NCBI GenBank assembly: GCA_002269645.1
Contig: NIVC01002364.1
Location: 95,813-159,812, forward strand
Origin: Macrostomum lignano
Taxonomy: Eukaryota
Length of the DNA: 64,000 nt
Reading direction: 5' to 3'
Below are positions 40,662-64,000 of the stretch, one piece after another. Position numbers and translations under genes: made by a program. Position 1 is the stretch's first letter. The number at the start of each line of letters is the position of its first letter. The notes beneath the pieces are model-generated. The model was not told where the DNA came from, ran no database searches, and saw nothing but the letters and a program-made list of their open reading frames with translations.

Positions 40662-40974
40662 AGCTGATTAAATGTGAAATGAACGTGAAAGGTGAACTGC
40701 CGAATTTTCAGTGTGACTTTTCTTCTATTTTCTAATTTTCTTAGATTTTTACTGCACAATGTTTTGTCTGTACTACAAACTATAATATCTATTTTTTCTG
40801 GACCGTACTTATTTTGCCATAGTTGGTAAGCATTACACATTATACACATGTCTGCAGAACAGTGCACTGTAGTGTAGGGCAGTTGGGGGTTGCTCCTCCA
40901 AAAACGAAATCACAGGAGCTTGAATTAGTTGTAGTTGCAACTTAGTAAACTAGTTGTAAAGCTTACTTGGGTTC

Positions 40975-41295
40975 CACTGAGGGGACTCCACCGAGGGGGA
41001 TTCCAGTGAGAGGGATTCCGCTGAGAGGAGGATTTCCCTGAGAGGGATTCCACTGGAGGTGATTTCCCTAAGGGGATTCCATTAAGGGGGATTCGATTCC
41101 ATTGAGGGGGGTTACACAAAGAGGGGTTTCCAAAGAGGGAGGTTCCACTAAAAGTGGGATTTCCCTGAAGGGGATTCCACTGAAGGGGATTCCACAGAGG
41201 GGGATTCCACTGAGGGGGATTCCATCAAGGGGGATTCCACAAAGAGGAGATTTTACTGAGGGGGTTTTCCCTGAAGGGGATTCCACTGACAGGGA
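40975..41295. repeat. Degenerate GGGGATTCC repeat cluster
   Basis: Directly visible; related to 50100-50570. Confidence 0.85.
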
Positions 41296-41965
41296 TTTAA
41301 CTATGTTGGCCTAAGTAACCCTAGTGTGTAAAGCTACATACGAGTAGATCTTTACGAACATTTGTCCGATGATAAATAGGGTAATTATTGCGAATGTAAT
41401 AAATTCATATGATATAATACGCTCGTACAAACAAACAACAATTTAATCTTTTATTTTTTTATACTACTTTTTTATATTTTTTGCCTCGTGTATACCAGCC
41501 TTTGCACTTTTATTTGACTCAAACAGAAATTATCAGTTGGCAATATCGACTTATACAATATACACGAAATTAAAAGCAATATCTCGTAATAAAGCCTGTT
41601 TGTCTCTATCGATCTATGAGTACAATAGATATGTTCGTTATCGTTCAACGTGAATACAGCGCTTACCCTGAAAGCTCTAAAAATTATCAATACTAAATGA
41701 AAGCCAAACAATTTTTACGAGGTTTTCAAACTGAGACAGGGAAGAATGAAAGTTAGAAAGCCAGTTCATTGATCAATGACTCACGACAAACCACCTGGCC
41801 AGTGAGGTTTAAATAACAGAGGTTTCGGCCATAGACATTGATGTTAGCAAAAATCATTTACAGCACAGCACGACTAAGCTTATATAACGAATTCATCCCA
41901 TATTAAAAACTGGCTTGTATATTTACTATATATAAAAAAATTGAAACTTTCAACAAATCGAAATA

Positions 41966-44900
41966 ATGGATGCCCAGACTGTTCGACTGGCGAGTTTCAG
42001 AGCCGAGGAGCTGGAGAACTTTGTCAGACACCCAAAGACTCGGCCTGCGCACCTCTCCAGCCGCACCATGGAGGCGCTCTTAATCGGCCATCCGCTCACT
42101 CGAATGCCTAAGGAGGCTTTCCGGTCTGCCGACGAAGGTGAGAGTTCGGCCTTCTGCTGAACCGGATGTAGCGCTGTTCCCTTGAGTCAATTCCTAGATA
42201 TATTTACCGGAAGTTCAGTCGTTCCCTGAATAAAAATCGGACAACTCTTCTTCTAGGGGAAGAAGACACGAAATTAACAGCCCGCTGTACACTCCTGTGT
42301 GAGTGTGTGCATGTGCGTGTGACTGCGTACGCATCCGCGCGCTTGTGTGCCTGCTCAGGGGAGTCGGCGGAATGGGCAGTAATGCCTCTCGCCGGTTGTG
42401 ACAATGTCGATTAAAGTCCGCCAGGATGCACACCACCCCTGCCTCTAATAAAAAAAATAGCAGTCTCTTCCTGGCTTTTCAAATTAATCAGTTCTTTGAA
42501 CTCAAAATTATGAGCCAATTATTTTTCATCTTAAGATCAATGATTAGTTATTTATGTTGGCAACAGATATGCATTCAAAAAGTTTTGTTTCGTTGACGCA
42601 TTTGCTAATTGAAGTTGCGCGAAAGCAAAATGCTGTCTGCATGCTGACGCCACAGGTAATTACTAGCTGGTCGAGGGGGGCTTAGAAATTTTTTGATAAT
42701 AGCTTTAATTTTCAGATACACCTGCATTGACGAATTAACAGGTGGCACCGAAGCACTGATTTCTCTATTGCATCTGTTAGCTGGAAACGCCACAATGTCA
42801 GGGTAATTTGTCAGTAAATTGGTTTATCCAGGGTGTAACTGTGATGTTTCGCACCGAAAAATATCTATGAATGTTGCAGTAAGGGGGTTTATCATAAGCA
42901 GGGGGCAGTGTGCACCCTGGCGCACTTTAAGGCACAACCGATTCAGGGCCACTGAGCTAGCTGCTAAAAATAGCTACGACCGCCTACGAATATAATTAGG
43001 GAATCCAAATCGTATTGAAATCTTCGAGAGAAGACAGTGGTAAATACCTGGATGCTAAAAATAGTTATCATGGGAATCCCCGTGGTAGTAAATCCGACAA
43101 TTTAGTGAGAACGAATTAGCTGCTAAAAATAGCTATAATTGCAAATTGCCAGGGAATCCTAATCGCATTGAAATCGTCGTAAAGACGGTGGTAAATATCT
43201 TGGGTACTAAAAATAGCTATCATCGGAAATCCCGGTGCTGGTAAATCCGACAATTCAGTGAGAATGAACTAGCTGCTAAAAATAGCTATAATTAGGGAAT
43301 CCCAACCGCATTGAAATCGTCGAGAAGAAAGTGGTAAATACCTGGATGCTAAAAATAGCTATCAGGGGAAATCCCGGTGCTGGTAAATCCGACAATTCAG
43401 TGAGAATGAATTAGCTGCTAAAAATAGCTATAGTTAGGGTATCTCTGTGTGTTCAGATCTCAAACAAGACGATACAAAAGCTGTGGCCATCAAACCGCAC
43501 TCTCACACAGGCAAGTCCGTCAGTGAAACGTTGAGCCTGAGCGAGCTGGGCAGCTCTCTGATGAACCTGTTCAGACGCCTGCTGGTGCCCTACATCCTGG
43601 CCTTCATAACTTGCACCTTTCTGTACCGCCTGTACCTCAAATTCAGTGACGAAGATGCTTTTTCTATGCGGATGCAAGGCCGTCCTAAAGGACGAAAATG
43701 TGAAAAAATTTCCCCCATTTATCCGAATAAAATCATTTGCTACGGGATCCTTGGTTTTACCTGCTTGTTTTTTACTGCGCTCGCCAGCTCGATTCGAAAA
43801 TTAGCTATTCGGTTCACCGACTTTATTGCGCTTCGAACTATCACCATGGCAACGTGTCATATCATGAGCCGGATTAGGCATTTGTATGGTCTGCTGCAAA
43901 CCACGGATCCCAATTGTGAGCCGACGTACTCAAAATTTTGTATTCTTTGAAAATCAACGCCCTCCAGGTGGCGCCATTCTTTATTGGGTCCTTCCGGTGG
44001 CGCCGTTACTTTATTGAATCCTTCAGGTGGCGCCATTCTTTATTGAGTCCTTCAGGTGGCGCTATTCTTTTATTGAATCCTTCAGGTGGCGCCACTCTTT
44101 ATTGAGTCCTTCAGGTGGCGCCATTCTTTATTGAATCCTTCAGGTGGCGCCATTCTTTATTGAGTCCTTCAGGTGGCGCCATTCTTTATTGAGTCCTTCA
44201 GGTGGCGCCATTCTTTATTGAATCCTTCAGGTGGCGCCATTCTTTATTGAATCCTTCAGGTGGCGCCACTCTTTATTGAGTCCTTCAGGTGGCGCCATTC
44301 TTTATTGAATCCTTCAGGTGGCGCCATTCTTTATTGAGTCCTTCAGGTGGCGCCATTCTTTATTGAATCCTTCAGGTGGCGCCATTCTTTATTGAATCCT
44401 TCAGGTGGCGCCATTCTTTATTGAATCCTTCAGGTGGCGCCATTCTTTATTGAAACCTTCGGGTGGCGCCACTCTTTATTGAGCCCTTCAGGTGGCGCCA
44501 TTCTTTATTGAGTCCTTCAGGTGGCGCCATTCTTTATTGAATCCTTCAGGTGGCGCCATTCTTTATTGAATCCTTCAGGTGGCGCCATTCTTTATTGAAT
44601 CCTTCAGGTGGCGCCATTCTTTATTGAATCCTTCAGGTGGCGCCATTTTTTATTGAATCCTTCAGATGGCGCCATTCTTTATTGAGTCCTTCAGGTAGCG
44701 CCATTCTTTATTGAGTCCTTCAGGTGGCGCCATTCTTTATTGAGTCCTTCAGGTGGCGCCACTCTTTATTGAGTCCTTCAGGTGGCGCCATTCTTTATTG
44801 AATCCTTCAGGTGGCGCCATTCTTTATTGAGTCCTTCAGGTGGCGCCATTCTTTTATTGAATCCTTCAGGTGGCGCCACTCTTTATTGAATCCTTCACGT

Positions 44901-47900
44901 GGCGCCACTCTTTATTGAATCCTTCAGGTGGCGCCACTCTTTATTGAATCCTTCAGGTGGCGCCATTCTTTATTGAATCCTTCAGGTGGCGCCATTCTTT
45001 ATTGAATCCTTCAGGTGGCGCCACTCTTTATTGAATCCTTCAGGTGGCGCCACTCTTTATTGAATCCTTCAGGTGGCGCCACTCTTTATTGAATCCTTCA
45101 GGTGGCGCCATTCTTTATTGAATTCTTCAGGTGGCGCCATTCTTTATTGAGTCCTTCAGGTGGCGCCATTCTTTATTGAATCCTTCAGGTGGCGCCATTC
45201 TTTATTGAATCCTTCAGGTGGCGCCATTCTTTATTGAATCCTTCAGGTGGCGCCATTCTTTATTGAATCCTTCAGGTGGCGCCATTCTTTATTGAATCCT
45301 TCAGGTGGCGCCATTCTTTATTGAGTCCTTCAGGTGGCGCCATTCTTTATTGAGTCCTTCAGGTGGCGCCACTCTTTATCGAGTCCTTCAGGTGGCGCCA
45401 TTCTTTATTGAGCCTTCAGGTGGCGCCATTCTTTATTGAATCCTTCAGGTGGCGCCATTCTTTATTGAATCCTTCAGGTGGCGCCATTCTTTATTGAATC
45501 CTTCCGGTGGCGCCGTTACTTTATTGAATCCTTCAGGTGGCGCCATTCTTTATTGAGTCCTTCAGGTGGCGCCATTCTTTTATTGAATCCTTCAGGTTGC
45601 GCCACTCTTTAATGAGTCCTTCAGGTGGCGCCATTCTTTATTGAATCCTTCAGGTGGCGCCATTCTTTATTGAATCCTTCCGGTGGCGCCGTTACTTTAT
45701 TGAATCCTTCAGGTGGCGCCATTCTTTATTGAGTCCTTCAGGTGGCGCCATTCTTTTATTGAATCCTTCAGGTGGCGCCACTCTTTAATGAGTCCTTCAG
45801 GTGGCGCCACTCTTTATTGAGCCCTTCAGGTGGCGCCATTCTTTATTGAGTCCTTCAGGTGGCGCCATTCTTTATTGAGTCCTTCAGGTGGCGCCATTCT
45901 TTATTGAATTCTTCAGGTGGCGCCATTCTTTATTGAGTCCTTCAGGTGGCGCCATTCTTTATTGAATCCTTCAGGTGGCGCCACTCTTTATTGAGCCCTT
46001 CAGGTGGCGCCATTCTTTATTGAATCCTTCAGGTGGCGCCATTCTTTATTGAATCCTTCAGGTGGCGCCATTCTTTATTGAATCCTTCAGGTGGCGCCAT
46101 TCTTTATTGAATCCTTCAGGTGGCGCCATTCTTTATTGAATCCTTCAGGTGGCGCCATTCTTTATTGAGTCCTTCAGGTGGCGCCATTCTTTATTGAGTC
46201 CTTCAGGTGGCGCCACTCTTTATCGAGTCCTTCAGGTGGCGCCATTCTTTATTGAGCCCTTCAGGTGGCGCCATTCTTTATTGAATCCTTCAGGTGGCGC
46301 CATTCTTTATTGAATCCTTCAGGTGGCGCCATTCTTTATTGAATCCTTCCGGTGGCGCCGTTACTTTATTGAATCCTTCAGGTGGCGCCATTCTTTATTG
46401 AGTCCTTCAGGTGGCGCCATTCTTTTATTGAATCCTTCAGGTTGCGCCACTCTTTAATGAGTCCTTCAGGTGGCGCCATTCTTTATTGAATCCTTCAGGT
46501 GGCGCCATTCTTTATTGAATCCTTCCGGTGGCGCCGTTACTTTATTGAATCCTTCAGGTGGCGCCATTCTTTATTGAGTCCTTCAGGTGGCGCCATTCTT
46601 TTATTGAATCCTTCAGGTGGCGCCACTCTTTAATGAGTCCTTCAGGTGGCGCCACTCTTTATTGAGCCCTTCAGGTGGCGCCATTCTTTATTGAGTCCTT
46701 CAGGTGGCGCCATTCTTTATTGAGTCCTTCAGGTGGCGCCATTCTTTATTGAATTCTTCAGGTGGCGCCATTCTTTATTGAGTCCTTCAGGTGGCGCCAT
46801 TCTTTATTGAAACCTTCGGGTGGCGCCACTCTTTATTGAGCCCTTCAGGTGGCGCCATTCTTTATTGAATCCTTCAGGTGGCGCCATTCTTTATTGAATC
46901 CTTCAGATGGCGCCATTCTTTATTGAGTCCTTCAGGTAGCGCCATTCTTTATTGAGTCCTTCAGGTGGCGCCATTCTTTATTGAATCCTTCAGGTGGCGC
47001 CATTCTTTATTGAATCCTTCAGGTGGCGCCATTCTTTATTGAATCCTTCAGGTGGCGCCATTCTTTATTGAATCCTTCAGATGGCGCCATTCTTTATTGA
47101 GTCCTTCAGGTAGCGCCATTCTTTATTGAGTCCTTCAGGTAGCGCCATTCTTTATTGAGTCCTTCAGGTGGCGCCACTCTTTATTGAGTCCTTTAGGTGG
47201 CGCCATAACCTCTTACTGCGCCATTAACGTGACCCTGTTAACTAATATTGTTTTAGTTTAGTAAAGACAATTCTAGTTAATAAATTTGTGATTATTAATT
47301 ACACCAGCCATCAAAGACAGGCCAAAGCCAATAAGCTACCACATCTGCTATCTGTTTGAGTCGTTTCTGCGCAGCCGTCTGCTCATGCTCGTCTGCAACT
47401 GCGTCCCGATCCTGCTCTGCATCATCTGCGTCATGGTGGACACCAGAATGGAACAACTGCTGATTCGATGGCAGCTCCTTATTGGTGAGACAATTAGCCA
47501 ATCTGCCAGTCTGCTTCCAATCTGCCAGTCTGCTTCCAGTCTGCCAGTCTGTTTTCAATCTGCCAGTCTGTTTCCAATTTGCCAGTCTGTTTCCAATCTG
47601 CCAGTCTGCTTCCGATCTGCCAGTCTGTTTCCAATCTGCCAGTCTGTTTTCAATTTGCCAGTCTGTTTCCAATCTGCCAGTCTGTTTCCAATCTGCCAGT
47701 CTGTTTTCAATCTGCCAGTCTGTTTTCAATTTGCCAGTCTGTTTCCAATCTGCCAGTCTGTTTCCAATCTGCCAGCCTGTTTCCAATCTGCCAGTCTGTT
47801 TTCAATTTGCCAGTCTGTTTCCAATCTGCCAGTCTGTTTCCAATCTGCCAGTCTGTTTCCAATTTGCCAGTCTGTTTCCAATCTGCCAGTCTGTTTCCAA

Positions 47901-50900
47901 TCTGCCAGTCTGTTTCCAATTTGCCAGTCTGTTTCCAATCTGCCAGTCTGTTTCCAATTTGCCAGTCTGTTTTCAATTTGCCAGTCTGTTTCCAGTCTGC
48001 CAGTCTGTTTTCAATTTGCCAGTCTGTTTTCAATTTGCCAGTCTGTTTTCAATTTGCCAGTCTGTTTCCGTATTATCTTATCAAAGTCAAATTTAAATTC
48101 TTAAAACGTTTTTTCAGCATTTCTACACGTATTTCTATTAAGCTGCGTCCTGTCAACCAGTTTAAAATCTGTTCTCTGGTTCAAGGCCTTCCACCTGATG
48201 TGCCTGGCGGTGTCTCTACTGTTTATTAATAAAATTCTCAACATCCACGAATTGATTTTGACAGCGTGGCAAATGCCAATATTTTTCTTTCAGGCTATCA
48301 GGTATAAACACTTGATTACCTGTTGATTTTAGAGTGCACTAGTGAGTGATACCTGTTGATTAGAGTGCACTAGTGAGTGATACCTGTTGATTAGAATGCA
48401 CTAGTGAGTGATACCTGTTGATTAGAGTGCACTAGTGAGTGATACCTGTTGATTTTAGAGTGCACTAGTGAGTGATACCTGTTGATTTTAGAGTGCACTA
48501 GTGAGTGATACCTGTTGATTAGAGTGCAGTAGTGAGTGATACCTGTTGATTTTAGAGTGCAGTAGTGAGTGATACCTGTTGATTAGAGTGCACTAGTGAG
48601 TGATACCTGTTGATTAGAATGCACTAGTGAGTGATACCTGTTGATTTTAGAGTGCACTAGTGAGTGATACCTGTTGATTTTAGAGTGCACTAGTGAGTGA
48701 TACCTGTTGATTAGAGTGCACTAGTGAGTGATACCTGTTGATTTTAGAGTGCACTAGTGAGTGATACCTGTTGATTTTAGAGTGCAGTAGTGAGTGATAC
48801 CTGTTGATTAGAGTGCACTAGTGAGTGATACCTGTTGATTAGAGTGCAGTAGTGAGTGATACCTGTTGATTAGAGTGCAGTAGTGAGTGATACCTGTTGA
48901 TTTTAGAGTGCACTAGTGAGTGATACCTGTTGATTAGAGTGCAGTAGTGAGTGATACCTGTTTATTTTAGAGTGCACTAGTGAGTGATACCTGTTGATTA
49001 GAGTGCACTAGTGAGTGATACCTGTTTATTTTAGAGTGCACTAGTGAGTGATACCTGTTGATTAGAGTGCACTAGTGAGTGATACCTGTTGATTTTAGAG
49101 TGCACTAGTGAGTGATACCTGTTGATTAGAGTGCAGTAGTGAGTGATACCTGTTGATTTTAGAGTGCACTAGTGAGTGATACCTGTTGATTAGAGGTGCA
49201 CTAGTGAGTGATACCTGTTGATTAGAGTGCACTAGTGAGTGATACCTGCTGATTAGAGTGTACGGTAGATTGTGACACCTGTTAATCGACTAATTCCAAT
49301 CTAAAAGAATCAAACTAACACGCAGATCTGTGGAAGTGTTCAACAGGACTTCAGAGGATCTAGAATCAGTATTAAAAAAATATGACAGCCTCAGAGAATC
49401 AAATTGGTTTTTTACTAACATCTTGCACGTGGCGTACATACTGACCGTCAGTCTGCTATTGAGGCTGGTTAACTTTCAAAAGCATCTTAATCTGCTTCAG
49501 GTGCTGTTTAGGTAAGTCTAAAAAAGGTTCCTAAATTGTATACAGAAAAATGGAAAATAATCACCTAAAACATTTTTTTCGAGAATAACACTATTTTAGA
49601 AATCTTTAATAAGACGGGCAGAACAGCTGAGCAGAGTGTACATCCCTGACTGATTAGAAAGTCGGGGTCGCTGTACACCCAGTGTGAGCTGTGTGGATGA
49701 GTGCGTGCCCTGCGTACAGCATTGGCTCTTGTCTGTGCTCAGGGAGTCAGAGAAATGAATTTCTTTTACAAAGAGCAACTACAAAAAACCGTCAACAATG
49801 CAGATACAACTTCCTGATGGACCCTGTTGAGTCTATCCTATTCCTTGTGGCTGTCTGCCAGCTACCGCCGCTAACCAGCATTCTCATTCTGCGACCGCAG
49901 CTGTCGAAACTCACTGAATCAGAGATGCAAAGCCTGCTGCTAATCGGATCTGTGCAGTGCCTTCTCACCAGTGCCAGGCCCTATCACCTGGCGCATAAGG
50001 ATTTTGTGCTGGGTTCTAGGATCATTTGCACGCTAGGTTTGGCTTTTTTCATTTTTAATAAACATTCTCCCTCGCTGAAGAATTACCCTAATCTCACAGG
50101 AATTCACCCCTAGCAGAACTTCCCCGCGGAATTCTCTTCGAAAGCATTCCCTCGCATGGATTTCCTTCAGTAAGATTCCCCATACAGGGAATCCCCTCAA
50201 AGAGATTCTCCTCAGAGGGATTCCCCTCAAAGAGGGATTCCCCTCAAAGAGGGATTTCCCTCACAGGGATTCCCCTCAAAGGAACTCACCTCATAGGGAT
50301 TCCTCTCAAATGGATTCCCCTCACAGGGATTCCTCTCAAATGGATTCCTTCAAAGGGATTCTCCGCACAGGGATTACCCTCACAGGGATTCTCCACAAAA
50401 TTCCCAAATTGATTCTCATTGCAGGGATTTCCCCACAGAAATTCCCCTCACAGGGATTCCCCTCATAGAGATTCCCCTCAAAGGGATTCTCCACAAAGAT
50501 TCCCTAAAGTGATTCTCATTGCAGGGATTCCCCTTCGCAGAGATTCCACTAACAGGGGTTCCCATCACACGGGGAATGAGCATGTCCCTGCGTTCATCAG
50601 GCTGCTAAATTCAAAACTATATTTTGTTTATCCCTAATCCCCCGGCTTCTAGGTCCCCTAGCAACTGTGTGCGCCACATTCGTGTCCAGTATAGTTTACC
50701 CTAGCAACAGCGACCAGAAGTCAGTCCTGCTGCAGCATAGTCAAGCGATAGTAACTCGCAATCAGTCCCTATCGCGCGGTCTCCGACGCCTGTTGGTGAA
50801 CAAAACTAGGATGGTCTGTCGCCTGCTGCTGCTGCTCATTGTGTCCCACTGCATCTTGGATCGGTGCGCTTATTATTTTCAAGTGATATTCAGCCTTACG

Positions 50901-53230: not shown

Positions 53231-53451
53231 TCAGAAACTTAAAAAATAACCAGCTCCGCCAGAAAACTCATCAATTAACTGACTGCCGGCACGGATAGCG
53301 GCTGCTGCTGCTGCTGCTGCTGCTGCTGCGGCTTGTGAGCAGCAAGTGAACCAAATGACGGATGCAGCGGCGAGATCAGAATGCTCGCTGCTGATCGTTA
53401 AAGCGCATTCTTGTCTCTTAGGCATGTCGCTGGCGTTGCTGACTTCAGAAG
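53231..53451 (-). CDS. Putative terminal exon of the gene hosting the exon array
   Basis: Same acceptor (tttcttttcctcgcag) as the array units, but a diverged 3' end (SQLIDEFSGGAGYFLSF-stop). An AATAAA lies on the minus strand at 53153-53148. Confidence 0.5.
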
Positions 53452-53938
53452 CTGCGAGGAAAAGAAATCAATTAAGATAGGCTTGCTTTAGTAATCATTA
53501 ATAGGCTATAAAGGAACCCTTTAATAGAACGTGTTCAACTAATGCTGGGTCTGTTTTGAAAAGTCAGAACTCAGAAGTAGTCGCGATTAGAATCAGTATT
53601 GTCCCAATAAGTGCGACCCAACAAATGCTGTTCAAAAAATAGGCCTGGCTGCAATGTCCCAATAAATGCCCAACAAATTACTAGCCTTGAGCTAGGCTGG
53701 GCTGTGTTTACTATTCATTGCGTTTGTAGCTTGTGTCCCAACAATGCCACTGAGATTGTTGCATTGCTTTTGAATTGTGCTCTACCAGGTAACACAAGTA
53801 CTCTGGTGTACAATACTTCTACAGCAGATAATACTCACCCAAAACAGATCGTCTCTTTCTCTTTAATCCTGTGCCAGACGGGTTTTCTTCAGATCCACCA
53901 GAAAATTCACAAATAGACTGACTGCCTGCACGGATAGC

Positions 53939-53971
<33 letters not shown>

Positions 53972-54582
53972 GGCTTGTGAGCAGCAAGGGAACCAAATGA
54001 CGGATGCAGCGGCGAGATCAGAATGCTCGCTGCTGATCGTTAAAGCGCATTCTTGTCTCTTAGGCATGTCGCTGGCGTTGCTGACTTCAGAAGCTGCGAG
54101 GAAAAGAAATCAATTAAGATAGGCTTGCTTTAGTAATCATTAATAGGCTATAAAGGAACCCTTTAATAGAACGTGTTCAACTAATGCTGGGTCTGTTTTG
54201 AAAAGTCAGAACTCAGAAGTAGTCGCGATTAGAATCAGTATTGTCCCAATAAGTGCGACCCAACAAATGCTGTTCAAAAAATAGGCCTGGCTGCAATGTC
54301 CCAATAAATGCCCAACAAATTACTAGCCTTGAGCTAGGCTGGGCTGTGTTTACTATTCTTTGCGTTTGTATAGCTTGTGTCCCAACAATGCCACTGAGAT
54401 TGTTGCATTGCTTTTGAATTGTGCTCTACCAGGTAACACAAGTACTCTGGTGTACAATACTTCTACAGCAGATAATACTCACCCAAAACAGATCGTCTCT
54501 TTCTCTTTAATCCTGTGCCAGACGGGTTATCTTCAGATCCACCAGAAAATTCACAAATAGACTGACTGCCTGCACGGATAGC

Positions 54583-54618
<36 letters not shown>

Positions 54619-55244
54619 GGCTTGTGAGCAGCAAGTGAACCAAATGACGGATGCAGCGGCGAGATCAGAATGCTCGCTGCTGATCGTTAAAGCGCATTCT
54701 TGTCTCTTAGGCATGTCGCTGGCGTTGCTGACTTCAGAAGCTGCGAGGAAAAGAAATCAATTAAGATAGGCTTGCTTTAGTAATCATTAATAGGCTATAA
54801 AGGAACCCTTTAATAGAACGTGTTCAACTAATGCTGGGTCTGTTTTGAAAAGTCAGAACTCAGAAGTAGTCGCGATTAGAATCAGTATTGTCCCAATAAG
54901 TGCGACCCAACAAATGCTGTTCAAAAAATAGGCCTGGCTGCAATGTCCCAATAAATGCCCAACAAATTACTAGCCTTGAGCTAGGCTGGGCTGTGTTTAC
55001 TATTCTTTGCGTTTGTATAGCTTGTGTCCCAACAATGCCACTGAGATTGTTGCATTGCTTTTGAATTGTGCTCTACCAGGTAACACAAGTACTCTGGTGT
55101 ACAATACTTCTACAGCAGATAATACTCACCCAAAACAGATCGTCTCTTTCTCTTTAATCCTGTGCCAGACGGGTTATCTTCAGATCCACCAGAAAATTCA
55201 CAAATAGACTGACTGCCTGCACGGATAGCGGCTGCTGCTGCTGC

Positions 55245-55623
55245 TTTTCTTTCTTTCTTTCTTTTTCGGGTCACGGACATTGTAGCTAGACGTAGCTAAT
55301 AGGACCGGGGCGTAGCCCCATGCAGCCGGGGCGCTGACCCTGCGCGGGCGGGCAGTAGACGGCGGAATCCAATTTGCGGCCTGCGGCGGGTGGCCAGAGA
55401 GCGTGGGGACCCGAGTCCCGGTGCGCAGGGCTCCTCCGCAGACCGACTTACGCTGTAAAAACCGCCATCCACCGCCAACCCAACGTTGGGGGACAGCTCT
55501 CCCAGGCTGCATACCCGGAGGTGAGACCAATTCGTCACCCCGTCGATGGCAGGGACGCACGGAGCTCCTGCCACATTGGCGGGGTGTCCAGGGGCGCGAC
55601 GTGGACGCTGGTCTCGTGCCACC

Positions 55624-55624
<1 letters not shown>
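55245..55624 (-). mobile_element. 380-bp non-autonomous retroposon (SINE/SIDE-like) with a 5' ribozyme and 3' (GAAA)n tail, inserted in a (CAG)n tract
   Basis: Present in only one array unit and absent from the others. It is GC-rich, splits the CTG run, and has the tail GAAAAAGAAAGAAAGAAAGAAAA on the minus strand. The two flanking tracts together are longer than any intact tract, consistent with a target-site duplication. Confidence 0.85.
55523..55624 (-). ncRNA. HDV/CPEB3-like self-cleaving ribozyme (predicted nested double pseudoknot)
   Basis: GGGUGGC-AC-GAGACCA-GCG-UCCACGU-CGC-GCCCCU-GG-A-CACCCCG...CGGGGUG-ACGAAU-UGGUCUC. P2 (7 bp), P3 (3 bp), L3 UCCACGU, P1.1 CC/GG, P4 and the J4/2 C-G-A-A are all in the canonical order. 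P1 needs a bulged U. Confidence 0.85.
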
Positions 55625-55656
<32 letters not shown>

Positions 55657-56265
55657 GGCTTGTGAGCAGCAAGTGAACCAAATGACGGATGCAGCGGCGA
55701 GATCAGAATGCTCGCTGCTGATCGTTAAAGCGCATTCTTGTCTCTTAGGCATGTCGCTGGCGTTGCTGACTTCAGAAGCTGCGAGGAAAAGAAATCAATT
55801 AAGATAGGCTTGCTTTAGTAATCATTAATAGGCTATAAAGGAACCCTTTAATAGAACGTGTTCAACTAATGCTGGGTCTGTTTTGAAAAGTCAGAACTCA
55901 GAAGTAGTCGCGATTAGAATCAGTATTGTCCCAATAAGTGCGACCCAACAAATGCTGTTCAAAAAATAGGCCTGGCTGCAATGTCCCAATAAATGCCCAA
56001 CAAATTACTAGCCTTGAGCTAGGCTGGGCTGTGTTTACTATTCATTGCGTTTGTAGCTTGTGTCCCAACAATGCCACTGAGATTGTTGCATTGCTTTTGA
56101 ATTGTGCTCTACCAGGTAACACAAGTACTCTGGTGTACAATACTTCTACAGCAGATAATACTCACCCAAAACAGATCGTCTCTTTCTCTTTAATCCTGTG
56201 CCAGACGGGTTTTCTTCAGATCCACCAGAAAATTCACAAATAGACTGACTGCCTGCACGGATAGC

Positions 56266-56301
<36 letters not shown>

Positions 56302-56910
56302 GGCTTGTGAGCAGCAAGTGAACCAAATGACGGATGCAGCGGCGAGATCAGAATGCTCGCTGCTGATCGTTAAAGCGCATTCTTGTCTCTTAGGCATGTC
56401 GCTGGCGTTGCTGACTTCAGAAGCTGCGAGGAAAAGAAATCAATTAAGATAGGCTTGCTTTAGTAATCATTAATAGGCTATAAAGGAACCCTTTAATAGA
56501 ACGTGTTCAACTAATGCTGGGTCTGTTTTGAAAAGTCAGAACTCAGAAGTAGTCGCGATTAGAATCAGTATTGTCCCAATAAGTGCGACCCAACAAATGC
56601 TGTTCAAAAAATAGGCCTGGCTGCAATGTCCCAATAAATGCCCAACAAATTACTAGCCTTGAGCTAGGCTGGGCTGTGTTTACTATTCTTTGCGTTTGTA
56701 GCTTGTGTCCCAACAATGCCACTGAGATTGTTGCATTGCTTTTGAATTGTGCTCTACCAGGTAACACAAGTACTCTGGTGTACAATACTTCTACAGCAGA
56801 TAATACTCACCCAAAACAGATCGTCTCTTTCTCTTTAATCCTGTGCCAGACGGGTTTTCTTCAGATCCACCAGAAAATTCACAAATAGACTGACTGCCTG
56901 CACGGATAGC

Positions 56911-56943
<33 letters not shown>

Positions 56944-57551
56944 GGCTTGTGAGCAGCAAGTGAACCAAATGACGGATGCAGCGGCGAGATCAGAATGCTC
57001 GCTGCTGATCGTTAAAGCGCATTCTTGTCTCTTAGGCATGTCGCTGGCGTTGCTGACTTCAGAAGCTGCGAGGAAAAGAAATCAATTAAGATAGGCTTGC
57101 TTTAGTAATCATTAATAGGCTATAAAGGAACCCTTTAATAGAACGTGTTCAACTAATGCTGGGTCTGTTTTGAAAAGTCAGAACTCAGAAGTAGTCGCGA
57201 TTAGAATCAGTATTGTCCCAATAAGTGCGACCCAACAAATGCTGTTCAAAAAATAGGCCTGGCTGCAATGTCCCAATAAATGCCCAACAAATTACTAGCC
57301 TTGAGCTAGGCTGGGCTGTGTTTACTATTCTTGCGTTTGTAGCTTGTGTCCCAACAATGCCACTGAGATTGTTGCATTGCTTTTGAATTGTGCTCTACCA
57401 GGTAACACAAGTACTCTGGTGTACAATACTTCTACAGCAGATAATACTCACCCAAAACAGATCGTCTCTTTCTCTTTAATCCTGTGCCAGACGGGTTTTC
57501 TTCAGATCCACCAGAAAATTCACAAATAGACTGACTGCCTGCACGGATAGC

Positions 57552-57584
<33 letters not shown>

Positions 57585-58193
57585 GGCTTGTGAGCAGCAA
57601 GTGAACCAAATGACGGATGCAGCGGCGAGATCAGAATGCTCGCTGCTGATCGTTAAAGCGCATTCTTGTCTCTTAGGCATGTCGCTGGCGTTGCTGACTT
57701 CAGAAGCTGCGAGGAAAAGAAATCAATTAAGATAGGCTTGCTTTAGTAATCATTAATAGGCTATAAAGGAACCCTTTAATAGAACGTGTTCAACTAATGC
57801 TGGGTCTGTTTTGAAAAGTCAGAACTCAGAAGTAGTCGCGATTAGAATCAGTATTGTCCCAATAAGTGCGACCCAACAAATGCTGTTCAAAAAATAGGCC
57901 TGGCTGCAATGTCCCAATAAATGCCCAACAAATTACTAGCCTTGAGCTAGGCTGGGCTGTGTTTACTATTCATTGCGTTTGTAGCTTGTGTCCCAACAAT
58001 GCCACTGAGATTGTTGCATTGCTTTTGAATTGTGCTCTACCAGGTAACACAAGTACTCTGGTGTACAATACTTCTACAGCAGATAATACTCACCCAAAAC
58101 AGATCGTCTCTTTCTCTTTAATCCTGTGCCAGACGGGTTTTCTTCAGATCCACCAGAAAATTCACAAATAGACTGACTGCCTGCACGGATAGC

Positions 58194-58226
<33 letters not shown>

Positions 58227-58836
58227 GGCTTGTGAGCAGCAAGTGAACCAAATGACGGATGCAGCGGCGAGATCAGAATGCTCGCTGCTGATCGTTAAAG
58301 CGCATTCTTGTCTCTTAGGCATGTCGCTGGCGTTGCTGACTTCAGAAGCTGCGAGGAAAAGAAATCAATTAAGATAGGCTTGCTTTAGTAATCATTAATA
58401 GGCTATAAAGGAACCCTTTAATAGAACGTGTTCAACTAATGCTGGGTCTGTTTTGAAAAGTCAGAACTCAGAAGTAGTCGCGATTAGAATCAGTATTGTC
58501 CCAATAAGTGCGACCCAACAAATGCTGTTCAAAAAATAGGCCTGGCTGCAATGTCCCAATAAATGCCCAACAAATTACTAGCCTTGAGCTAGGCTGGGCT
58601 GTGTTTACTATTCTTTGCGTTTGTATAGCTTGTGTCCCAACAATGCCACTGAGATTGTTGCATTGCTTTTGAATTGTGCTCTACCAGGTAACACAAGTAC
58701 TCTGGTGTACAATACTTCTACAGCAGATAATACTCACCCAAAACAGATCGTCTCTTTCTCTTTAATCCTGTGCCAGACGGGTTTCTTCAGATCCACCAGA
58801 AAATTCACAAATAGACTGACTGCCTGCACGGATAGC

Positions 58837-58872
<36 letters not shown>

Positions 58873-59481
58873 GGCTTGTGAGCAGCAAGTGAACCAAATG
58901 ACGGATGCAGCGGCGAGATCAGAATGCTCGCTGCTGATCGTTAAAGCGCATTCTTGTCTCTTAGGCATGTCGCTGGCGTTGCTGACTTCAGAAGCTGCGA
59001 GGAAAAGAAATCAATTAAGATAGGCTTGCTTTAGTAATCATTAATAGGCTATAAAGGAACCCTTTAATAGAACGTGTTCAACTAATGCTGGGTCTGTTTT
59101 GAAAAGTCAGAACTCAGAAGTAGTCGCGATTAGAATCAGTATTGTCCCAATAAGTGCGACCCAACAAATGCTGTTCAAAAAATAGGCCTGGCTGCAATGT
59201 CCCAATAAATGCCCAACAAATTACTAGCCTTGAGCTAGGCTGGGCTGTGTTTACTATTCATTGCGTTTGTAGCTTGTGTCCCAACAATGCCACTGAGATT
59301 GTTGCATTGCTTTTGAATTGTGCTCTACCAGGTAACACAAGTACTCTGGTGTACAATACTTCTACAGCAGATAATACTCACCCAAAACAGATCGTCTCTT
59401 TCTCTTTAATCCTGTGCCAGACGGGTTTTCTTCAGATCCACCAGAAAATTCACAAATAGACTGACTGCCTGCACGGATAGC

Positions 59482-59517
<36 letters not shown>

Positions 59518-60126
59518 GGCTTGTGAGCAGCAAGTGAACCAAATGACGGATGCAGCGGCGAGATCAGAATGCTCGCTGCTGATCGTTAAAGCGCATTCTT
59601 GTCTCTTAGGCATGTCGCTGGCGTTGCTGACTTCAGAAGCTGCGAGGAAAAGAAATCAATTAAGATAGGCTTGCTTTAGTAATCATTAATAGGCTATAAA
59701 GGAACCCTTTAATAGAACGTGTTCAACTAATGCTGGGTCTGTTTTGAAAAGTCAGAACTCAGAAGTAGTCGCGATTAGAATCAGTATTGTCCCAATAAGT
59801 GCGACCCAACAAATGCTGTTCAAAAAATAGGCCTGGCTGCAATGTCCCAATAAATGCCCAACAAATTACTAGCCTTGAGCTAGGCTGGGCTGTGTTTACT
59901 ATTCATTGCGTTTGTAGCTTGTGTCCCAACAATGCCACTGAGATTGTTGCATTGCTTTTGAATTGTGCTCTACCAGGTAACACAAGTACTCTGGTGTACA
60001 ATACTTCTACAGCAGATAATACTCACCCAAAACAGATCGTCTCTTTCTCTTTAATCCTGTGCCGGACGGGTTTTCTTCAGATCCACCAGAAAATTCACAA
60101 ATAGACTGACTGCCTGCACGGATAGC

Positions 60127-60159
<33 letters not shown>

Positions 60160-60766
60160 GGCTTGTGAGCAGCAAGTGAACCAAATGACGGATGCAGCGG
60201 CGAGATCAGAATGCTCGCTGCTGATCGTTAAAGCGCATTCTTGTCTCTTAGGCATGTCGCTGGCGTTGCTGACTTCAGAAGCTGCGAGGAAAAGAAATCA
60301 ATTAAGATAGGCTTGCTTTAGTAATCATTAATAGGCTATAAAGGAACCCTTTAATAGAACGTGTTCAACTAATGCTGGGTCTGTTTTGAAAAGTCAGAAC
60401 TCAGAAGTAGTCGCGATTAGAATCAGTATTGTCCCAATAAGTGCGACCCAACAAATGCTGTTCAAAAAATAGGCCTGGCTGCAATGTCCCAATAAATGCC
60501 CAACAAATTACTAGCCTTGAGCTAGGCTGGGCTGTGTTTACTATTCATTGCGTTTGTAGCTTGTGTCCCAACAATGCCACTGAGATTGTTGCATTGCTTT
60601 TGAATTGTGCTCTACCAGGTAACACAAGTACTCTGGTGTACAATACTTCTACAGCAGATAATACTCACCCAAAACAGATCGTCTCTTTCTCTTTAATCCT
60701 GTGCCGGACGGGTTTTCTTCAGATCCACCAGAAAATTCACAAATAGACTGACTGCCTGCACGGATA

Positions 60767-60801
<35 letters not shown>

Positions 60802-61409
60802 GGCTTGTGAGCAGCAAGTGAACCAAATGACGGATGCAGCGGCGAGATCAGAATGCTCGCTGCTGATCGTTAAAGCGCATTCTTGTCTCTTAGGCATGTC
60901 GCTGGCGTTGCTGACTTCAGAAGCTGCGAGGAAAAGAAATCAATTAAGATAGGCTTGCTTTAGTAATCATTAATAGGCTATAAAGGAACCCTTTAATAGA
61001 ACGTGTTCAACTAATGCTGGGTCTGTTTTGAAAAGTCAGAACTCAGAAGTAGTCGCGATTAGAATCAGTATTGTCCCAATAAGTGCGACCCAACAAATGC
61101 TGTTCAAAAAATAGGCCTGGCTGCAATGTCCCAATAAATGCCCAACAAATTACTAGCCTTGAGCTAGGCTGGGCTGTGTTTACTATTCATTGCGTTTGTA
61201 GCTTGTGTCCCAACAATGCCACTGAGATTGTTGCATTGCTTTTGAATTGTGCTCTACCAGTAACACAAGTACTCTGGTGTACAATACTTCTACAGCAGAT
61301 AATACTCACCCAAAACAGATCGTCTCTTTCTCTTTAATCCTGTGCCGGACGGGTTTTCTTCAGATCCACCAGAAAATTCACAAATAGACTGACTGCCTGC
61401 ACGGATAGC

Positions 61410-61442
<33 letters not shown>

Positions 61443-63961
61443 GGCTTGTGAGCAGCAAGTGAACAAATGACGGATGCAGCGGCGAGATCAGAATGCTCGC
61501 TGCTGATCGTTAAAGCGCATTCTTGTCTCTTAGGCATGTCGCTGGCGTTGCTGACTTCAGAAGCTGCGAGGAAAAGAAATCAATTAAGATAGGCTTGCTT
61601 TAGTAATCATTAATAGGCTATAAAGGAACCCTTTAATAGAACGTGTTCAACTAATGCTGGGTCTGTTTTGAAAAGTCAGAACTCAGAAGTAGTCGCGATT
61701 AGAATCAGTATTGTCCCAATAAGTGCGACCCAACAAATGCTGTTCAAAAAATAGGCCTGGCTGCAATGTCCCAATAAATGCCCAACAAATTACTAGCCTT
61801 GAGCTAGGCTGGGCTGTGTTTACTATTCATTGCGTTTGTAGCTTGTGTCCCAACAATGCCACTGAGATTGTTGCATTGCTTTTGAATTGTGCTCTACCAG
61901 GTAACACAAGTACTCTGGTGTACAATACTTCTACAGCAGATAATACTCACCCAAAACAGATCGTCTCTTTCTCTTTAATCCTGTGCCGGACGGGTTTTCT
62001 TCAGATCCACCAGAAAATTCACAAATAGACTGACTGCCTGCATGGATAGCGGCTGCTGCTGCTGCGGCTGCTGCTGCGGCTTGTGAGCAGCAAGTGAACC
62101 AAATGACGGATGCAGCGGCGAGATCAGAATGCTCGCTGCTGATCGTTAAAGCGCATTCTTGTCTCTTAGGCATGTCGCTGGCGTTGCTGACTTCAGAAGC
62201 TGCGAGGAAAAGAAATCAATTAAGATAGGCTTGCTTTAGTAATCATTAATAGGCTATAAAGGAACCCTTTAATAGAACGTGTTCAACTAATGCTGGGTCT
62301 GTTTTGAAAAGTCAGAACTCAGAAGTAGTCGCGATTAGAATCAGTATTGTCCCAATAAGTGCGACCCAACAAATGCTGTTCAAAAAATAGGCCTGGCTGC
62401 AATGTCCCAATAAATGCCCAACAAATTACTAGCCTTGAGCTAGGCTGGGCTGTGTTTACTATTCATTGCGTTTGTAGCTTGTGTCCCAACAATGCCACTG
62501 AGATTGTTGCATTGCTTTTGAATTGTGCTCTAAGTAACACAAGTACTCTGGTGTACAATACTTCTACAGCAGATAATACTCACCCAAAACAGATCGTCTC
62601 TTTCTCTTTAATCCTGTGCCGGACGGGTTTTCTTCAGATCCACCAGAAAATTCACAAATAGACTGACTGCCTGCACGGATAGCGGCTGCTGCTGCTGCTG
62701 CTGCTGCTGCTGCGGCTTGTGAGCAGCAAGTGAACCAAATGACGGATGCAGCGGCGAGATCAGAATGCTCGCTGCTGATCGTTAAAGCGCATTCTTGTCT
62801 CTTAGGCATGTCGCTGGCGTTGCTGACTTCAGAAGCTGCGAGGAAAAGAAATCAATTAAGATAGGCTTGCTTTAGTAATCATTAATAGGCTATAAAGGAA
62901 CCCTTTAATAGAACGTGTTCAACTAATGCTGGGTCTGTTTTGAAAAGTCAGAACTCAGAAGTAGTCGCGATTAGAATCAGTATTGTCCCAATAAGTGCGA
63001 CCCAACAAATGCTGTTCAAAAAATAGGCCTGGCTGCAATGTCCCAATAAATGCCCAACAAATTACTAGCCTTGAGCTAGGCTGGGCTGTGTTTACTATTC
63101 TTTGCGTTTGTAGCTTGTGTCCCAACAATGCCACTGAGATTGTTGCATTGCTTTTGAATTGTGCTCTACCAGGTAACACAAGTACTCTGGTGTACAATAC
63201 TTCTACAGCAGATAATACTCACCCAAAACAGATCGTCTCTTTCTCTTTAATCCTGTGCCGGACGGTTTTCTTCAGATCCACCAGAAAATTCACAAATAGA
63301 CTGACTGCCTGCACGGATAGCGGCTGCTGCTGCTGCTGCTGCTGCTGCTGCGGCTTGTGAGCAGCAAGTGAACCAAATGACGGATGCAGCGGCGAGATCA
63401 GAATGCTCGCTGCTGATCGTTAAAGCGCATTCTTGTCTCTTAGGCATGTCGCTGGCGTTGCTGACTTCAGAAGCTGCGAGGAAAAGAAATCAATTAAGAT
63501 AGGCTTGCTTTAGTAATCATTAATAGGCTATAAAGGAACCCTTTAATAGAACGTGTTCAACTAATGCTGGGTCTGTTTTGAAAAGTCAGAACTCAGAAGT
63601 AGTCGCGATTAGAATCAGTATTGTCCCAATAAGTGCGACCCAACAAATGCTGTTCAAAAAATAGGCCTGGCTGCAATGTCCCAATAAATGCCCAACAAAT
63701 TACTAGCCTTGAGCTAGGCTGGGCTGTGTTTACTTTCATTGCGTTTGTAGCTTGTGTCCCAACAATGCCACTGAGATTGTTGCATTGCTTTTGAATTGTG
63801 CTCTACCAGTAACACAAGTACTCTGGTGTACAATACTTCTACAGCAGATAATACTCACCCAAAACAGATCGTCTCTTTCTCTTTAATCCTGTGCCAGACG
63901 GGTTTTCTTCAGATCACCAGAAAATTCACAAATAGACTGACTGCCTGCACGGATAGCGGCA

Positions 63962-63993
<32 letters not shown>

Positions 63994-64000
63994 GGCTTTG

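What the first reader, a model, noticed from the sequence alone, without database searches (positions are those of the whole stretch)
55523..55624. HDV/CPEB3-like self-cleaving ribozyme hidden on the minus strand
Seen: the minus strand reads GGGUGGC AC GAGACCA GCG UCCACGU CGC GCCCCU GG A CACCCCG [UGGCAGG..CCUGCCA inner stem] CGGGGUG ACGAAU UGGUCUC. Every element of the HDV-like nested double pseudoknot is present in order: P1 ending in a G1-U wobble, a perfect 7-bp P2, a 3-bp P3 with a 7-nt L3, P1.1 CC/GG, a two-part P4, and J4/2 with the candidate catalytic C followed by GAA. Known: the P3-L3-P1 core is close to the mammalian CPEB3 ribozyme as I recall it (GCG UUCACGU CGC AGCCCCU). Caveat: P1 is 6 bp with a bulged U4. 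Activity is inferred, not shown.
Basis: partly seen in the sequence, partly recalled or inferred. Interest (0 to 1): 0.92.

Follow-up and report, generated by a model that had tools for sequence, protein, structure and literature searches.

The report
HDV-like ribozyme capping a flatworm retroposon
The sequence is a convincing candidate for a hepatitis-delta-type self-cleaving RNA, sitting at the first base of a 379-bp parasitic retroposon inserted into a CAG repeat in a Macrostomum flatworm genome; this is a new example of a well-known arrangement, not a new kind of thing.

Summary
On the minus strand, 55624-55523 contains every element of the HDV-type nested double pseudoknot: P1 (6 bp with G1-U wobble and bulged U4), a perfect 7-bp P2, a 3-bp P3, a 7-nt L3 (UCCACGU), a two-G-C P1.1, a two-part P4, and J4/2 reading A-C-GAAU.

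Rfam gives only sub-threshold matches: HDV_ribozyme 26.8 bits (cut-off 50) and CPEB3 14.4 bits (cut-off 35). A descriptor scan finds this motif once in the window and almost never in random sequence.

- The window is Macrostomum lignano or a very close relative.
- 53.3-64 kb is a 642-bp satellite in which every unit carries (CAG)9-11.
- One unit is interrupted, inside its CAG run, by a 379-bp insert.
- The insert's first base is the predicted cleavage-site G1. Its 3' end has a hairpin and a (GAAA)n tail. CAG repeats flank both sides, 14-15 in total.
- A second, near-identical copy lies in the poly-Q tract of an M. lignano WD-repeat gene model.

Best reading: a short non-autonomous non-LTR retroposon whose 5' ribozyme cuts it out of read-through transcripts, as in R2 SIDEs, Dong and L1Tc/NARTc. 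Cleavage and covariation could not be tested. It is a new member of a known kind.

The parts
55625..55660 (-). Upstream target flank: CCG(CAG)10C of the interrupted satellite unit. C55625 is the -1 nucleotide of the predicted cleavage site.
   Evidence: same flank as in intact units, ending ...CAGCAGC directly before G55624
55523..55624 (-). HDV-like ribozyme, 102 nt. Predicted scission is 5' of G1 (55624).
55618..55624 (-). P1 5' strand GGGUGGC (G1 = 55624; bulged U4 = 55621)
55609..55615 (-). P2 5' strand GAGACCA, preceded by J1/2 AC at 55616-55617
   Evidence: 7 Watson-Crick pairs with 55523-55529
55596..55608 (-). P3-L3-P3' hairpin GCG UCCACGU CGC. In L3, U20 = 55605, C21/C22 = 55604/55603 (P1.1 partners) and G25 = 55600.
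55588..55595 (-). P1 3' strand GCCCCU (55595-55590), then G36 and G37 of P1.1 (55589-55588)
55536..55586 (-). P4: outer stem CACCCCG/CGGGGUG, internal loop, inner stem UGGCAGG/CCUGCCA, 13-nt loop
   Evidence: both stems also appear in the unconstrained MFE and centroid folds
55530..55535 (-). J4/2 ACGAAU. The candidate catalytic cytosine is C91 = 55534.
   Evidence: aligned by the HDV model to the C of GGCuAAu
55523..55529 (-). P2 3' strand UGGUCUC
55246..55624 (-). Whole inserted element: 379 bp, 65% G+C, no protein-coding capacity of its own. The 3' boundary is uncertain by about 2 nt.
   Evidence: absent from the other 15+ satellite units, single copy in the window
55283..55298 (-). 3' hairpin UAGCUA-CGUC-UAGCUA just upstream of the tail. 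It is a candidate recognition element for a partner reverse transcriptase (inferred).
   Evidence: the 6-bp stem is present in both MFE and centroid
55246..55267 (-). A-rich simple-repeat tail GAAAAAGAAAGAAAGAAAGAAA
   Evidence: not present in intact units
55231..55245 (-). Downstream target flank AG(CAG)4C, followed by the normal satellite sequence CGCUAUCCG. Together with the upstream run this makes 14-15 CAG repeats, against 9-11 in intact units, so a target-site duplication of about 12-15 bp is likely.

Best explanation
Window 55624-55246 (minus strand) is one copy of a short, non-coding, non-autonomous non-LTR retroposon of Macrostomum. Its first 102 nt fold into an HDV-type self-cleaving ribozyme.

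Proposed mechanism; every step is inferred from anatomy and from what is established for R2, R2 SIDEs, Dong, R4, baggins and L1Tc/NARTc:
1. The element has no promoter of its own and is transcribed as part of a longer host transcript running through a (CAG)n tract.
2. The ribozyme folds co-transcriptionally and cuts between C55625 and G55624. This discards the upstream host RNA with a 2',3'-cyclic phosphate and leaves an element RNA that starts with a 5'-OH at G1.
3. The 3' hairpin and (GAAA)n tail are recognised in trans by the reverse transcriptase and endonuclease of an unidentified autonomous LINE.
4. That LINE nicks (CAG)n DNA in a fixed orientation and copies the RNA by target-primed reverse transcription. 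This gives an insert whose 5' end is exactly G1, flanked by duplicated CAG repeats.

Shown here: the fold, the insertion boundaries, the tail, the CAG flanks, and a second copy at another locus. Not shown: cleavage, the partner element, and transcription.
For: 1. Complete double-pseudoknot architecture with the core residues known to matter in HDV at equivalent places: G1-U wobble, U20 and G25 in L3, C21/C22 pairing with GG, and C followed by GAAU before P2 (roles of these residues as summarised in bioRxiv 10.1101/2022.09.22.508989).
2. The best Rfam match is HDV_ribozyme, full length. P2, which that model ignores, is a perfect 7-bp complement.
3. Chance expectation is negligible.
4. As a control, the bare core string GCGTYCACGTCGC..TGG..CGAAT(T) occurs 9 times in IMG/VR and 37 times in metagenomes. 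None of these has both P1 and P2. The full architecture, not the core string, is what is special.
5. Alignment with intact satellite units places the insertion's 5' edge at G1 to the base. The 3' edge comes after a (GAAA)n tail, with excess CAG repeats as expected of a target-site duplication.
6. A second copy exists. M. lignano protein A0A1I8HT69 (P0006) reads ...QQQQQQQPQR|GWHETSVHVAPLDTPPMWQEL..., which is the element from its first codon, directly after a poly-Q tract. A further 51 identical residues come from the element body, in a different gene and in the same orientation relative to CAG.
7. Its GWH codons (GGN UGG CAC), with the reading frame kept through to APLD, imply the same U4 and the same 6-nt P1 3' strand. 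The irregular P1 is therefore a family trait, compatible with recent mobility.
8. Literature: ribozymes at the exact 5' end of R4, Dong, baggins and L1Tc. Dong lies in (TAA)n and releases the upstream TAA repeats. R2 SIDEs keep only the ribozyme plus the 3' UTR (PMC3774820; PMC3414825; PMC6765202).
Against: - It is below the curated Rfam thresholds (26.8 against 50; 14.4 against 35).
- P1 has a bulged U in mid-helix. Published cases link P1 mismatches to weak or absent in vitro cleavage in horseshoe crab R2, sunflower and Anopheles funestus (PMC3774820).
- No DNA of any other copy could be obtained, so there is no covariation test.
- The nested MFE fold (-43.1 kcal/mol) extends P2 into P3 and J4/2. 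It competes with the native fold, which comes to roughly -40 kcal/mol when the helices are summed.
- Folding energy is not better than shuffles (z = -0.8).
- The target-site duplication cannot be separated rigorously from microsatellite length variation.
- No partner LINE was identified.
Confidence: 0.75

Rival explanations
1. The fold descends from a ribozyme, but this copy, or the whole family, no longer cleaves. The bulged U4 disrupts P1, so the motif is a fossil at the 5' end of a dead retroposon. The 5' end might instead have been set by an internal promoter, as Pr77 also does in L1Tc.
For: Mid-helix irregularity in P1. The bulged P1 duplex is 3.8 kcal/mol weaker than it would be without U4. 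P1 mismatches correlate with loss of in vitro activity in several HDV-like ribozymes (PMC3774820). A competing nested fold exists.
Against: The second copy shares U4 and is identical at all 72 aligned residues that can be compared, at a different locus. An RNA carrying this P1 was therefore mobilised recently, and with its 5' end at G1. Active ribozymes with irregular P1 are known: human CPEB3 has a bulged C7 at the top of P1, and a jewel wasp R2 has a 4-nt P1. All catalytic-core residues are intact.
Confidence: 0.2
2. Chance resemblance in G+C-rich DNA; no ribozyme ancestry.
For: Sub-threshold Rfam scores. The core 13-mer plus short flanking motifs recur by chance in bacterial DNA.
Against: The descriptor statistics give a chance rate of order 1e-12 per base or lower once P4 and CGAA are included. 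None of the 46 chance core matches has both P1 and P2. The motif starts at the exact base where an insertion begins.
Confidence: 0.03
3. A host-domesticated regulatory ribozyme in the manner of the mammalian CPEB3 intron ribozyme, or an integrated cDNA of a deltavirus-like circular RNA.
For: The P3-L3-P1 core is close to CPEB3. HDV-like agents exist in invertebrates (PMC7936874, listed).
Against: It lies in one unit of a satellite array, not at a conserved genic position. It has retroposon hallmarks: tail, flanking repeat duplication and a second dispersed copy. There is only one ribozyme, of one polarity, and no delta-antigen-like ORF in 379 bp.
Confidence: 0.02

Closest known systems
R2 SIDEs (Short Internally Deleted Elements) of Drosophila (PMC3414825)
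   Same: A non-coding element of a few hundred bp, made of a 5' HDV-like ribozyme joined to a 3' end recognised by a LINE's machinery. It is released from a co-transcript by self-cleavage and inserted site-specifically by target-primed reverse transcription.
   Different: The target here is (CAG)n, not the 28S rRNA gene. The host is a flatworm. The L3 sequence differs: UCCACGU against the CCUCCUCGUGG core quoted for R2. The tail is (GAAA)n. The partner element is unknown, so R2-clade membership is not established.
Dong and R4 non-LTR retrotransposons
   Same: Ribozyme cleavage at the very 5' end of the element. Dong inserts in a trinucleotide microsatellite, (TAA)n, and its ribozyme releases the upstream repeats (PMC3774820).
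   Different: Dong and R4 are autonomous and encode RT and endonuclease; this element is 379 bp with no ORF. The repeat is different (CAG).
L1Tc / NARTc of Trypanosoma cruzi (PMC3185411, PMC3383444)
   Same: An autonomous and non-autonomous pair sharing a 5' HDV-like ribozyme that frees the element from long co-transcripts.
   Different: Pr77 doubles as an internal promoter, and insertion there is not microsatellite-specific. The taxa are unrelated.
Mammalian CPEB3 ribozyme (Rfam RF00622)
   Same: P3 GCG/CGC and a 7-nt L3 with the ACGU palindrome. The two share 19 of 22 positions from P3 through P1' and CGAAUU in J4/2. The P1 helix is irregular in the human version.
   Different: CPEB3 has U21 and a weak one-pair P1.1; this one has C21, C22 and two G-C pairs as in HDV. 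CPEB3 has a short P4 and sits in a conserved intron of one mammalian gene. The score of 14.4 bits is below the cut-off of 35. The likeness is most simply explained by shared constraint on the catalytic core.
Genomic HDV ribozyme (Rfam RF00094)
   Same: Same topology. The numbering of G1, U20, C21, C22 and G25 is even the same. Two-G-C P1.1, and C-GAAU before P2.
   Different: P1 is 6 bp with a bulge instead of 7 bp. L3 is 7 nt rather than 8. P4 is much longer (51 nt). The score of 26.8 bits is below the cut-off of 50. It is cellular and retroposon-borne, not viral.

Membership tests
HDV-like ribozymes (structural class) | Nested double pseudoknot with P1, P2, P3, P1.1 and P4 in the canonical order | tested here: met
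   all helices listed pair by pair
HDV-like ribozymes (structural class) | Cleavage-site G1 forming a G-U wobble at the base of a continuous 6-7 bp P1 | tested here: inconclusive
   The G1-U35 wobble and six pairs are present, but U4 is bulged. The effect on activity is unknown.
HDV-like ribozymes (structural class) | 3-bp P3 closing a 7-8 nt L3 whose 2nd and 3rd residues pair with the two residues after P1 (P1.1), with the U20/G25 equivalents present | tested here: met
   L3 is UCCACGU, with C21-G37 and C22-G36
HDV-like ribozymes (structural class) | Catalytic cytosine at the start of J4/2, immediately before the P2 3' strand | tested here: met
   C91 (55534) in ACGAAU, aligned to the C75 position by the HDV model
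HDV-like ribozymes (structural class) | Mg2+-dependent self-scission abolished by mutating the catalytic C | not testable with these tools
   Needs a wet-lab assay
HDV-like ribozymes (structural class) | Helices supported by covariation among homologues | not testable with these tools
   No eukaryotic genome collection is searchable here. Protein-level and metagenome routes gave only one other copy, without DNA.
Rfam RF00094 HDV_ribozyme | Score at or above the gathering cut-off (50 bits) | tested here: not met
   26.8 bits
Rfam RF00622 CPEB3_ribozyme | Score at or above the gathering cut-off (35 bits), and location in the mammalian CPEB3 intron | tested here: not met
   14.4 bits. The host is a flatworm and the site is in a satellite.
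Ribozyme-capped non-LTR retroposons (R2 SIDE, Dong, NARTc type) | Ribozyme cleavage site coincides with the 5' end of the inserted element | tested here: met
   the insert begins at G55624. The second copy also begins with GWHE directly after poly-Q.
Ribozyme-capped non-LTR retroposons (R2 SIDE, Dong, NARTc type) | Hallmarks of target-primed reverse transcription: simple-repeat or A-rich 3' tail and target-site duplication | tested here: met
   (GAAA)n tail. 14-15 CAG repeats flank the insert, against 9-11 in intact units. The size of the duplication is uncertain because the target is itself a repeat.
Ribozyme-capped non-LTR retroposons (R2 SIDE, Dong, NARTc type) | Non-autonomous: no RT or endonuclease ORF | tested here: met
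   379 bp. The translations resemble no protein except the gene model that contains a copy.
Ribozyme-capped non-LTR retroposons (R2 SIDE, Dong, NARTc type) | An autonomous partner sharing the 3' end (and often the ribozyme) | not testable with these tools
   None in the window. The host genome is not searchable.
R2 clade specifically | Insertion at the R2 site of the 28S rRNA gene | tested here: not met
   No rRNA anywhere in the window. The target is (CAG)n.

The most novel reading that the evidence does not exclude
This is the founding observation of a family of (CAG)n-specific, orientation-specific, ribozyme-capped SINE-like retroposons in free-living flatworms. The family preferentially lands in transcribed CAG tracts, including poly-Q or poly-Ala coding repeats of genes, where it is co-transcribed with the host RNA and cleaves it. 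That would make it a microsatellite-targeting non-autonomous element with an HDV-type ribozyme whose core combines a CPEB3-type L3 with an HDV-type P1.1.
Probability: 0.3. Interest if true: 0.5.

Novelty: new member of a known kind. Interest (0 to 1): 0.4.

Why it matters
HDV-like ribozymes are already known to define the 5' ends of many non-LTR retrotransposons, so this does not change the picture. It does add three things.

- A clean candidate in Macrostomum. The two literature searches made here turned up no paper describing a ribozyme in that genus.
- An apparently CAG-repeat-specific, non-coding element. This would broaden the short list of microsatellite-targeting ribozyme elements, of which Dong in (TAA)n is the known example. 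Such an element could disrupt poly-Q-coding exons.
- A natural P1-bulge variant that appears to have been mobile recently. That makes it a convenient test case for how much P1 irregularity the HDV fold tolerates.

It also shows that the CPEB3-type L3 is not confined to mammals.

Tried and rejected
- The whole-window Rfam scan at gathering thresholds found nothing.
- I first guessed that the ribozyme recurs in every ~642-bp satellite unit, which would have made it a retrozyme-like tandem array. It does not: it is single-copy in the window.
- Searching for further copies through translated frames of the element found only A0A1I8HT69.
  - Its DNA is not on record.
  - Exact look-ups of seven local ORFs found nothing.
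- A strict 22-nt pattern in metagenomes gave 0 hits.
- Loose core patterns gave 37 hits in metagenomes and 9 in viral contigs. All are chance matches in G+C-rich, apparently bacterial DNA and lack combined P1 and P2 pairing.
- The paralogous M. lignano locus L047 does not reach the satellite and has no copy of the element.
- A full-text search for the core 13-mer returned nothing relevant.
- Plain MFE folding is uninformative for a pseudoknot; its z-score was -0.8.
- The 54-nt gap in the gene-model copy was considered as a real deletion of P4, J4/2 and P2. It is bounded by GT...AG and removes an in-frame stop, so it is more likely a predicted intron (read against the sequence).

Full report
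**Observation.** I wrote out every proposed pair.
- P1: G1-U35, G2-C34, G3-C33, G5-C32, G6-C31 and C7-G30, with U4 (55621) bulged.
- P2: seven Watson-Crick pairs (GAGACCA with UGGUCUC).
- P3: GCG with CGC.
- L3: UCCACGU.
- P1.1: C22-G36 and C21-G37.
- P4: an outer 7-bp stem (CACCCCG/CGGGGUG) and an inner 7-bp stem (UGGCAGG/CCUGCCA).
- J4/2: A-C-G-A-A-U, with the candidate catalytic cytosine at position 91, window 55534.

The residues that published work singles out in HDV all have counterparts, several at the same numbering. These are the G1-U wobble at the scissile site, the U20/G25 pair in L3, the two G-C pairs of P1.1 and the cytosine opening J4/2 (summarised in bioRxiv 10.1101/2022.09.22.508989).

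**Is it more than chance?**
- Rfam at curated thresholds reports nothing in the 64 kb.
- With permissive thresholds, the best match at the site is HDV_ribozyme. It is aligned end to end (model 1-89) at 26.8 bits, against a cut-off of 50, with E = 0.087 for 601 nt and 0.02 for 136 nt, against all 4227 families. CPEB3_ribozyme scores 14.4 bits against a cut-off of 35.
- The structure line of that HDV model covers P1, P3 and P4 but not P2. The perfect 7-bp P2 is therefore additional evidence that the model does not score.
- My own descriptor required P1 of 6-7 bp with at most one bulge and a G-U base, P3, L3 with CC, GG, P2 and a C in J4/2. It hits only this site in the window.
- With P2 of 7 bp it gives 1 hit in 80 Mb of Markov sequence with window composition, and 18 in 80 Mb with the element's 65% G+C composition.
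- Adding CGAA in place and a P4 of at least 7 bp multiplies those rates by about 1e-5. Even a genome-wide chance expectation is then well below one.
- As a negative control, the core string alone (GCGTYCACGTCGC, then TGG, then CGAAT/CGAATT at the right spacings) occurs 9 times in IMG/VR and 37 times in metagenome contigs. All are in G+C-rich, apparently bacterial DNA, and none combines a full P1 with a full P2.

**Context, which changes the picture.**
- From about 53.3 kb to the end of the window there is a tandem array of at least 17 units of about 642 bp, roughly 99% identical. On the minus strand each unit carries CCG(CAG)9-11CCGCUAUCC.
- The ribozyme is not part of the unit; it is single-copy in the window.
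- One unit is 1041 bp long because a 379-bp segment (55624-55246) interrupts its CAG run.
- Read on the minus strand, the junctions are ...(CAG)10 C | GGGUGGC... at the 5' side and ...CCCGAAAAAGAAAGAAAGAAAGAAA | AG(CAG)4 CCGCUAUCC at the 3' side.
- The first base of the insert is therefore the predicted cleavage-site G1.
- The insert ends in a (GAAA)n-type tail preceded by a 6-bp palindromic hairpin, UAGCUA-CGUC-UAGCUA, at 55298-55283.
- The interrupted unit carries 14-15 CAG repeats in total against 9-11 elsewhere. This is what a 12-15 bp target-site duplication would give.
- The element is 65% G+C and has no meaningful ORF.

**Organism.** An intronless ORF at 40389-40661 is a MEIG1 homologue (Pfam PF15163, E = 1e-33). 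It is 99% identical to a Macrostomum lignano protein. That protein's locus in assembly GCA_002269645.1 (NIVC01000126.1) matches the window at about 95% DNA identity. The window is therefore from M. lignano or a very close relative, either at a paralogous or homeologous locus or from a different assembly. The two literature searches made turned up no paper describing a ribozyme in this genus.

**A second copy.**
- Searching the protein databases with translated frames of the element returned a single hit: UniRef100_A0A1I8HT69, a WD-repeat gene model of M. lignano.
- Its sequence runs ...GQPQQQQQQQPQR-GWHETSVHVAPLDTPPMWQEL-PWESCPQRWVGGGWRFLQRKSVCGGALRTGTRVPTLSGHPPQAANWIPPSTARPRR-KQQK....
- tblastn places residues 271-291 on window 55624-55562, 21 of 21 identical. 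Residues 297-347 fall on the element body at 55491-55339, all identical in a second frame.
- The 54 nt that the model skips begin with GT, end with AG and contain an in-frame stop. They are most simply a predicted intron rather than a deletion; this is an inference from the sequence.
- This copy starts at the same first codon (GGN UGG CAC), directly after a poly-Q (CAG) tract. It is in the same orientation relative to CAG, and in an unrelated gene.
- Because GWH and the downstream frame are preserved, this copy also has U4 and a 6-nt P1 3' strand. The bulge is therefore a family feature, not a private lesion.
- The near identity of the two copies suggests recent mobility.
- The exact junction differs by two nucleotides (CAG CGN | GGN against CAGC | GGG). 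That is within the junction variation usual for target-primed insertions (PMC3414825).

**Interpretation.** The anatomy is that of a ribozyme-capped, non-autonomous non-LTR retroposon.
- Published work establishes that R2, R4, Dong, baggins and L1Tc carry HDV-like ribozymes that cut the element RNA out of a co-transcript, in several cases exactly at the element's 5' end.
- Dong sits in (TAA)n and releases the upstream TAA repeats.
- Drosophila R2 SIDEs and T. cruzi NARTc are short non-coding derivatives that keep the ribozyme and the 3' recognition sequences (PMC3774820; PMC3414825; PMC6765202; titles).
- By analogy, I propose read-through transcription from a host CAG-containing transcript, then self-cleavage 5' of G55624, then recognition of the 3' hairpin and tail by a partner LINE, and finally orientation-specific target-primed reverse transcription into (CAG)n.
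- Both observed copies lie in the sense orientation of a plausible host ORF. One is the 82-aa poly-Ala ORF of the satellite unit; the other is the WD-repeat gene. This fits co-transcription but is only two data points.

**Caveats.**
- P1 is irregular. The bulged duplex is computed to be 3.8 kcal/mol weaker than the same helix without U4.
- P1 mismatches have been linked to poor in vitro cleavage in several HDV-like ribozymes.
- On the other hand, active ribozymes with irregular P1 exist: human CPEB3 has a bulged C7, and a jewel wasp R2 has a 4-nt P1.
- The nested MFE (-43.1 kcal/mol) extends P2 into P3 and J4/2. It competes with the native fold, which is about -40 kcal/mol when the P1/P3/P4 and P2 contributions are summed.

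**Relation to CPEB3.**
From P3 to the end of P1 the sequence matches the Rfam CPEB3 consensus at 19 of 22 positions, and both have CGAAUU in J4/2.
- This RNA has C21 and C22 and a two-G-C P1.1 like HDV, where CPEB3 has U21 and a weak P1.1. It also has a long P4, fails the CPEB3 threshold, and sits in a flatworm satellite.
- The likeness is best read as shared constraint on the catalytic core, not family membership.

**Verdict.** This is a real, statistically solid HDV-like ribozyme motif. Its function as the 5'-processing device of a CAG-targeting SINE/SIDE-like retroposon is well supported by anatomy, but it has not been tested biochemically. It is a new member of a known kind, of moderate interest.

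Noticed in passing
window 1-48100: More than 30 different micro- and minisatellite arrays are packed almost back to back. Periods range from 4 to 183 bp and each array is 0.3-3.2 kb. Strand composition skews are strong and alternate. The arrays include (TAGA)n, (GACA)n and (ACAG)n, plus 29-, 52- and 18-bp minisatellites of 1.7-3.2 kb. The origin of this architecture was not explored.
   Followed up: no
window 53298-64000: At least 17 tandem units of a ~642-bp satellite, about 99% identical. Each has (CAG)9-11 and an ATG-initiated 82-83-aa minus-strand ORF that reads the repeat as poly-Ala (MPKRQECALTISSEHSDLAAASVIWFTCCSQ(A)nIRAGSQSICEFSGGSEENPSGTGLKRKRRSVLGEYYLL). There is no Pfam match above cut-off. 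Whether it is a transcribed tandem gene family is unknown. This matters because the retroposon sits in the sense orientation inside this ORF.
   Followed up: partly
window 40389-40661 (+): Intact intronless MEIG1 homologue (PF15163, E = 1e-33), 99% identical to M. lignano BOX15_Mlig026870g1. It identifies the source organism.
   Followed up: yes
window 34759-35193 (-): Probable first exon, with a signal-peptide-like start, of a carboxylesterase-family gene (PF00135, 26.3 bits, just under the cut-off of 27). The paralogous locus L047 carries a 710-aa COesterase gene at the matching position.
   Followed up: partly
L047 8779-19576 against window 39157-48067: M. lignano scaffold NIVC01000126.1 matches the window at only about 95% identity, including the 29-bp minisatellite at 43961-47206. 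The window is therefore a paralogous or homeologous copy, another haplotype, another assembly, or a sibling species.
   Followed up: partly
UniRef100_A0A1I8HT69 (P0006) residues 260-352: A deposited M. lignano WD-repeat gene model translates about 75 codons of the retroposon, ribozyme included, as protein. It bridges the element's stop codon with an apparent 54-nt GT-AG intron. This is probably an annotation artefact caused by a TE insertion in a poly-Q tract.
   Followed up: partly
window 55283-55298 (-): The perfect palindrome UAGCUA-CGUC-UAGCUA forms a 6-bp hairpin 16 nt upstream of the (GAAA)n tail. It is a candidate binding site for the partner reverse transcriptase.
   Followed up: no
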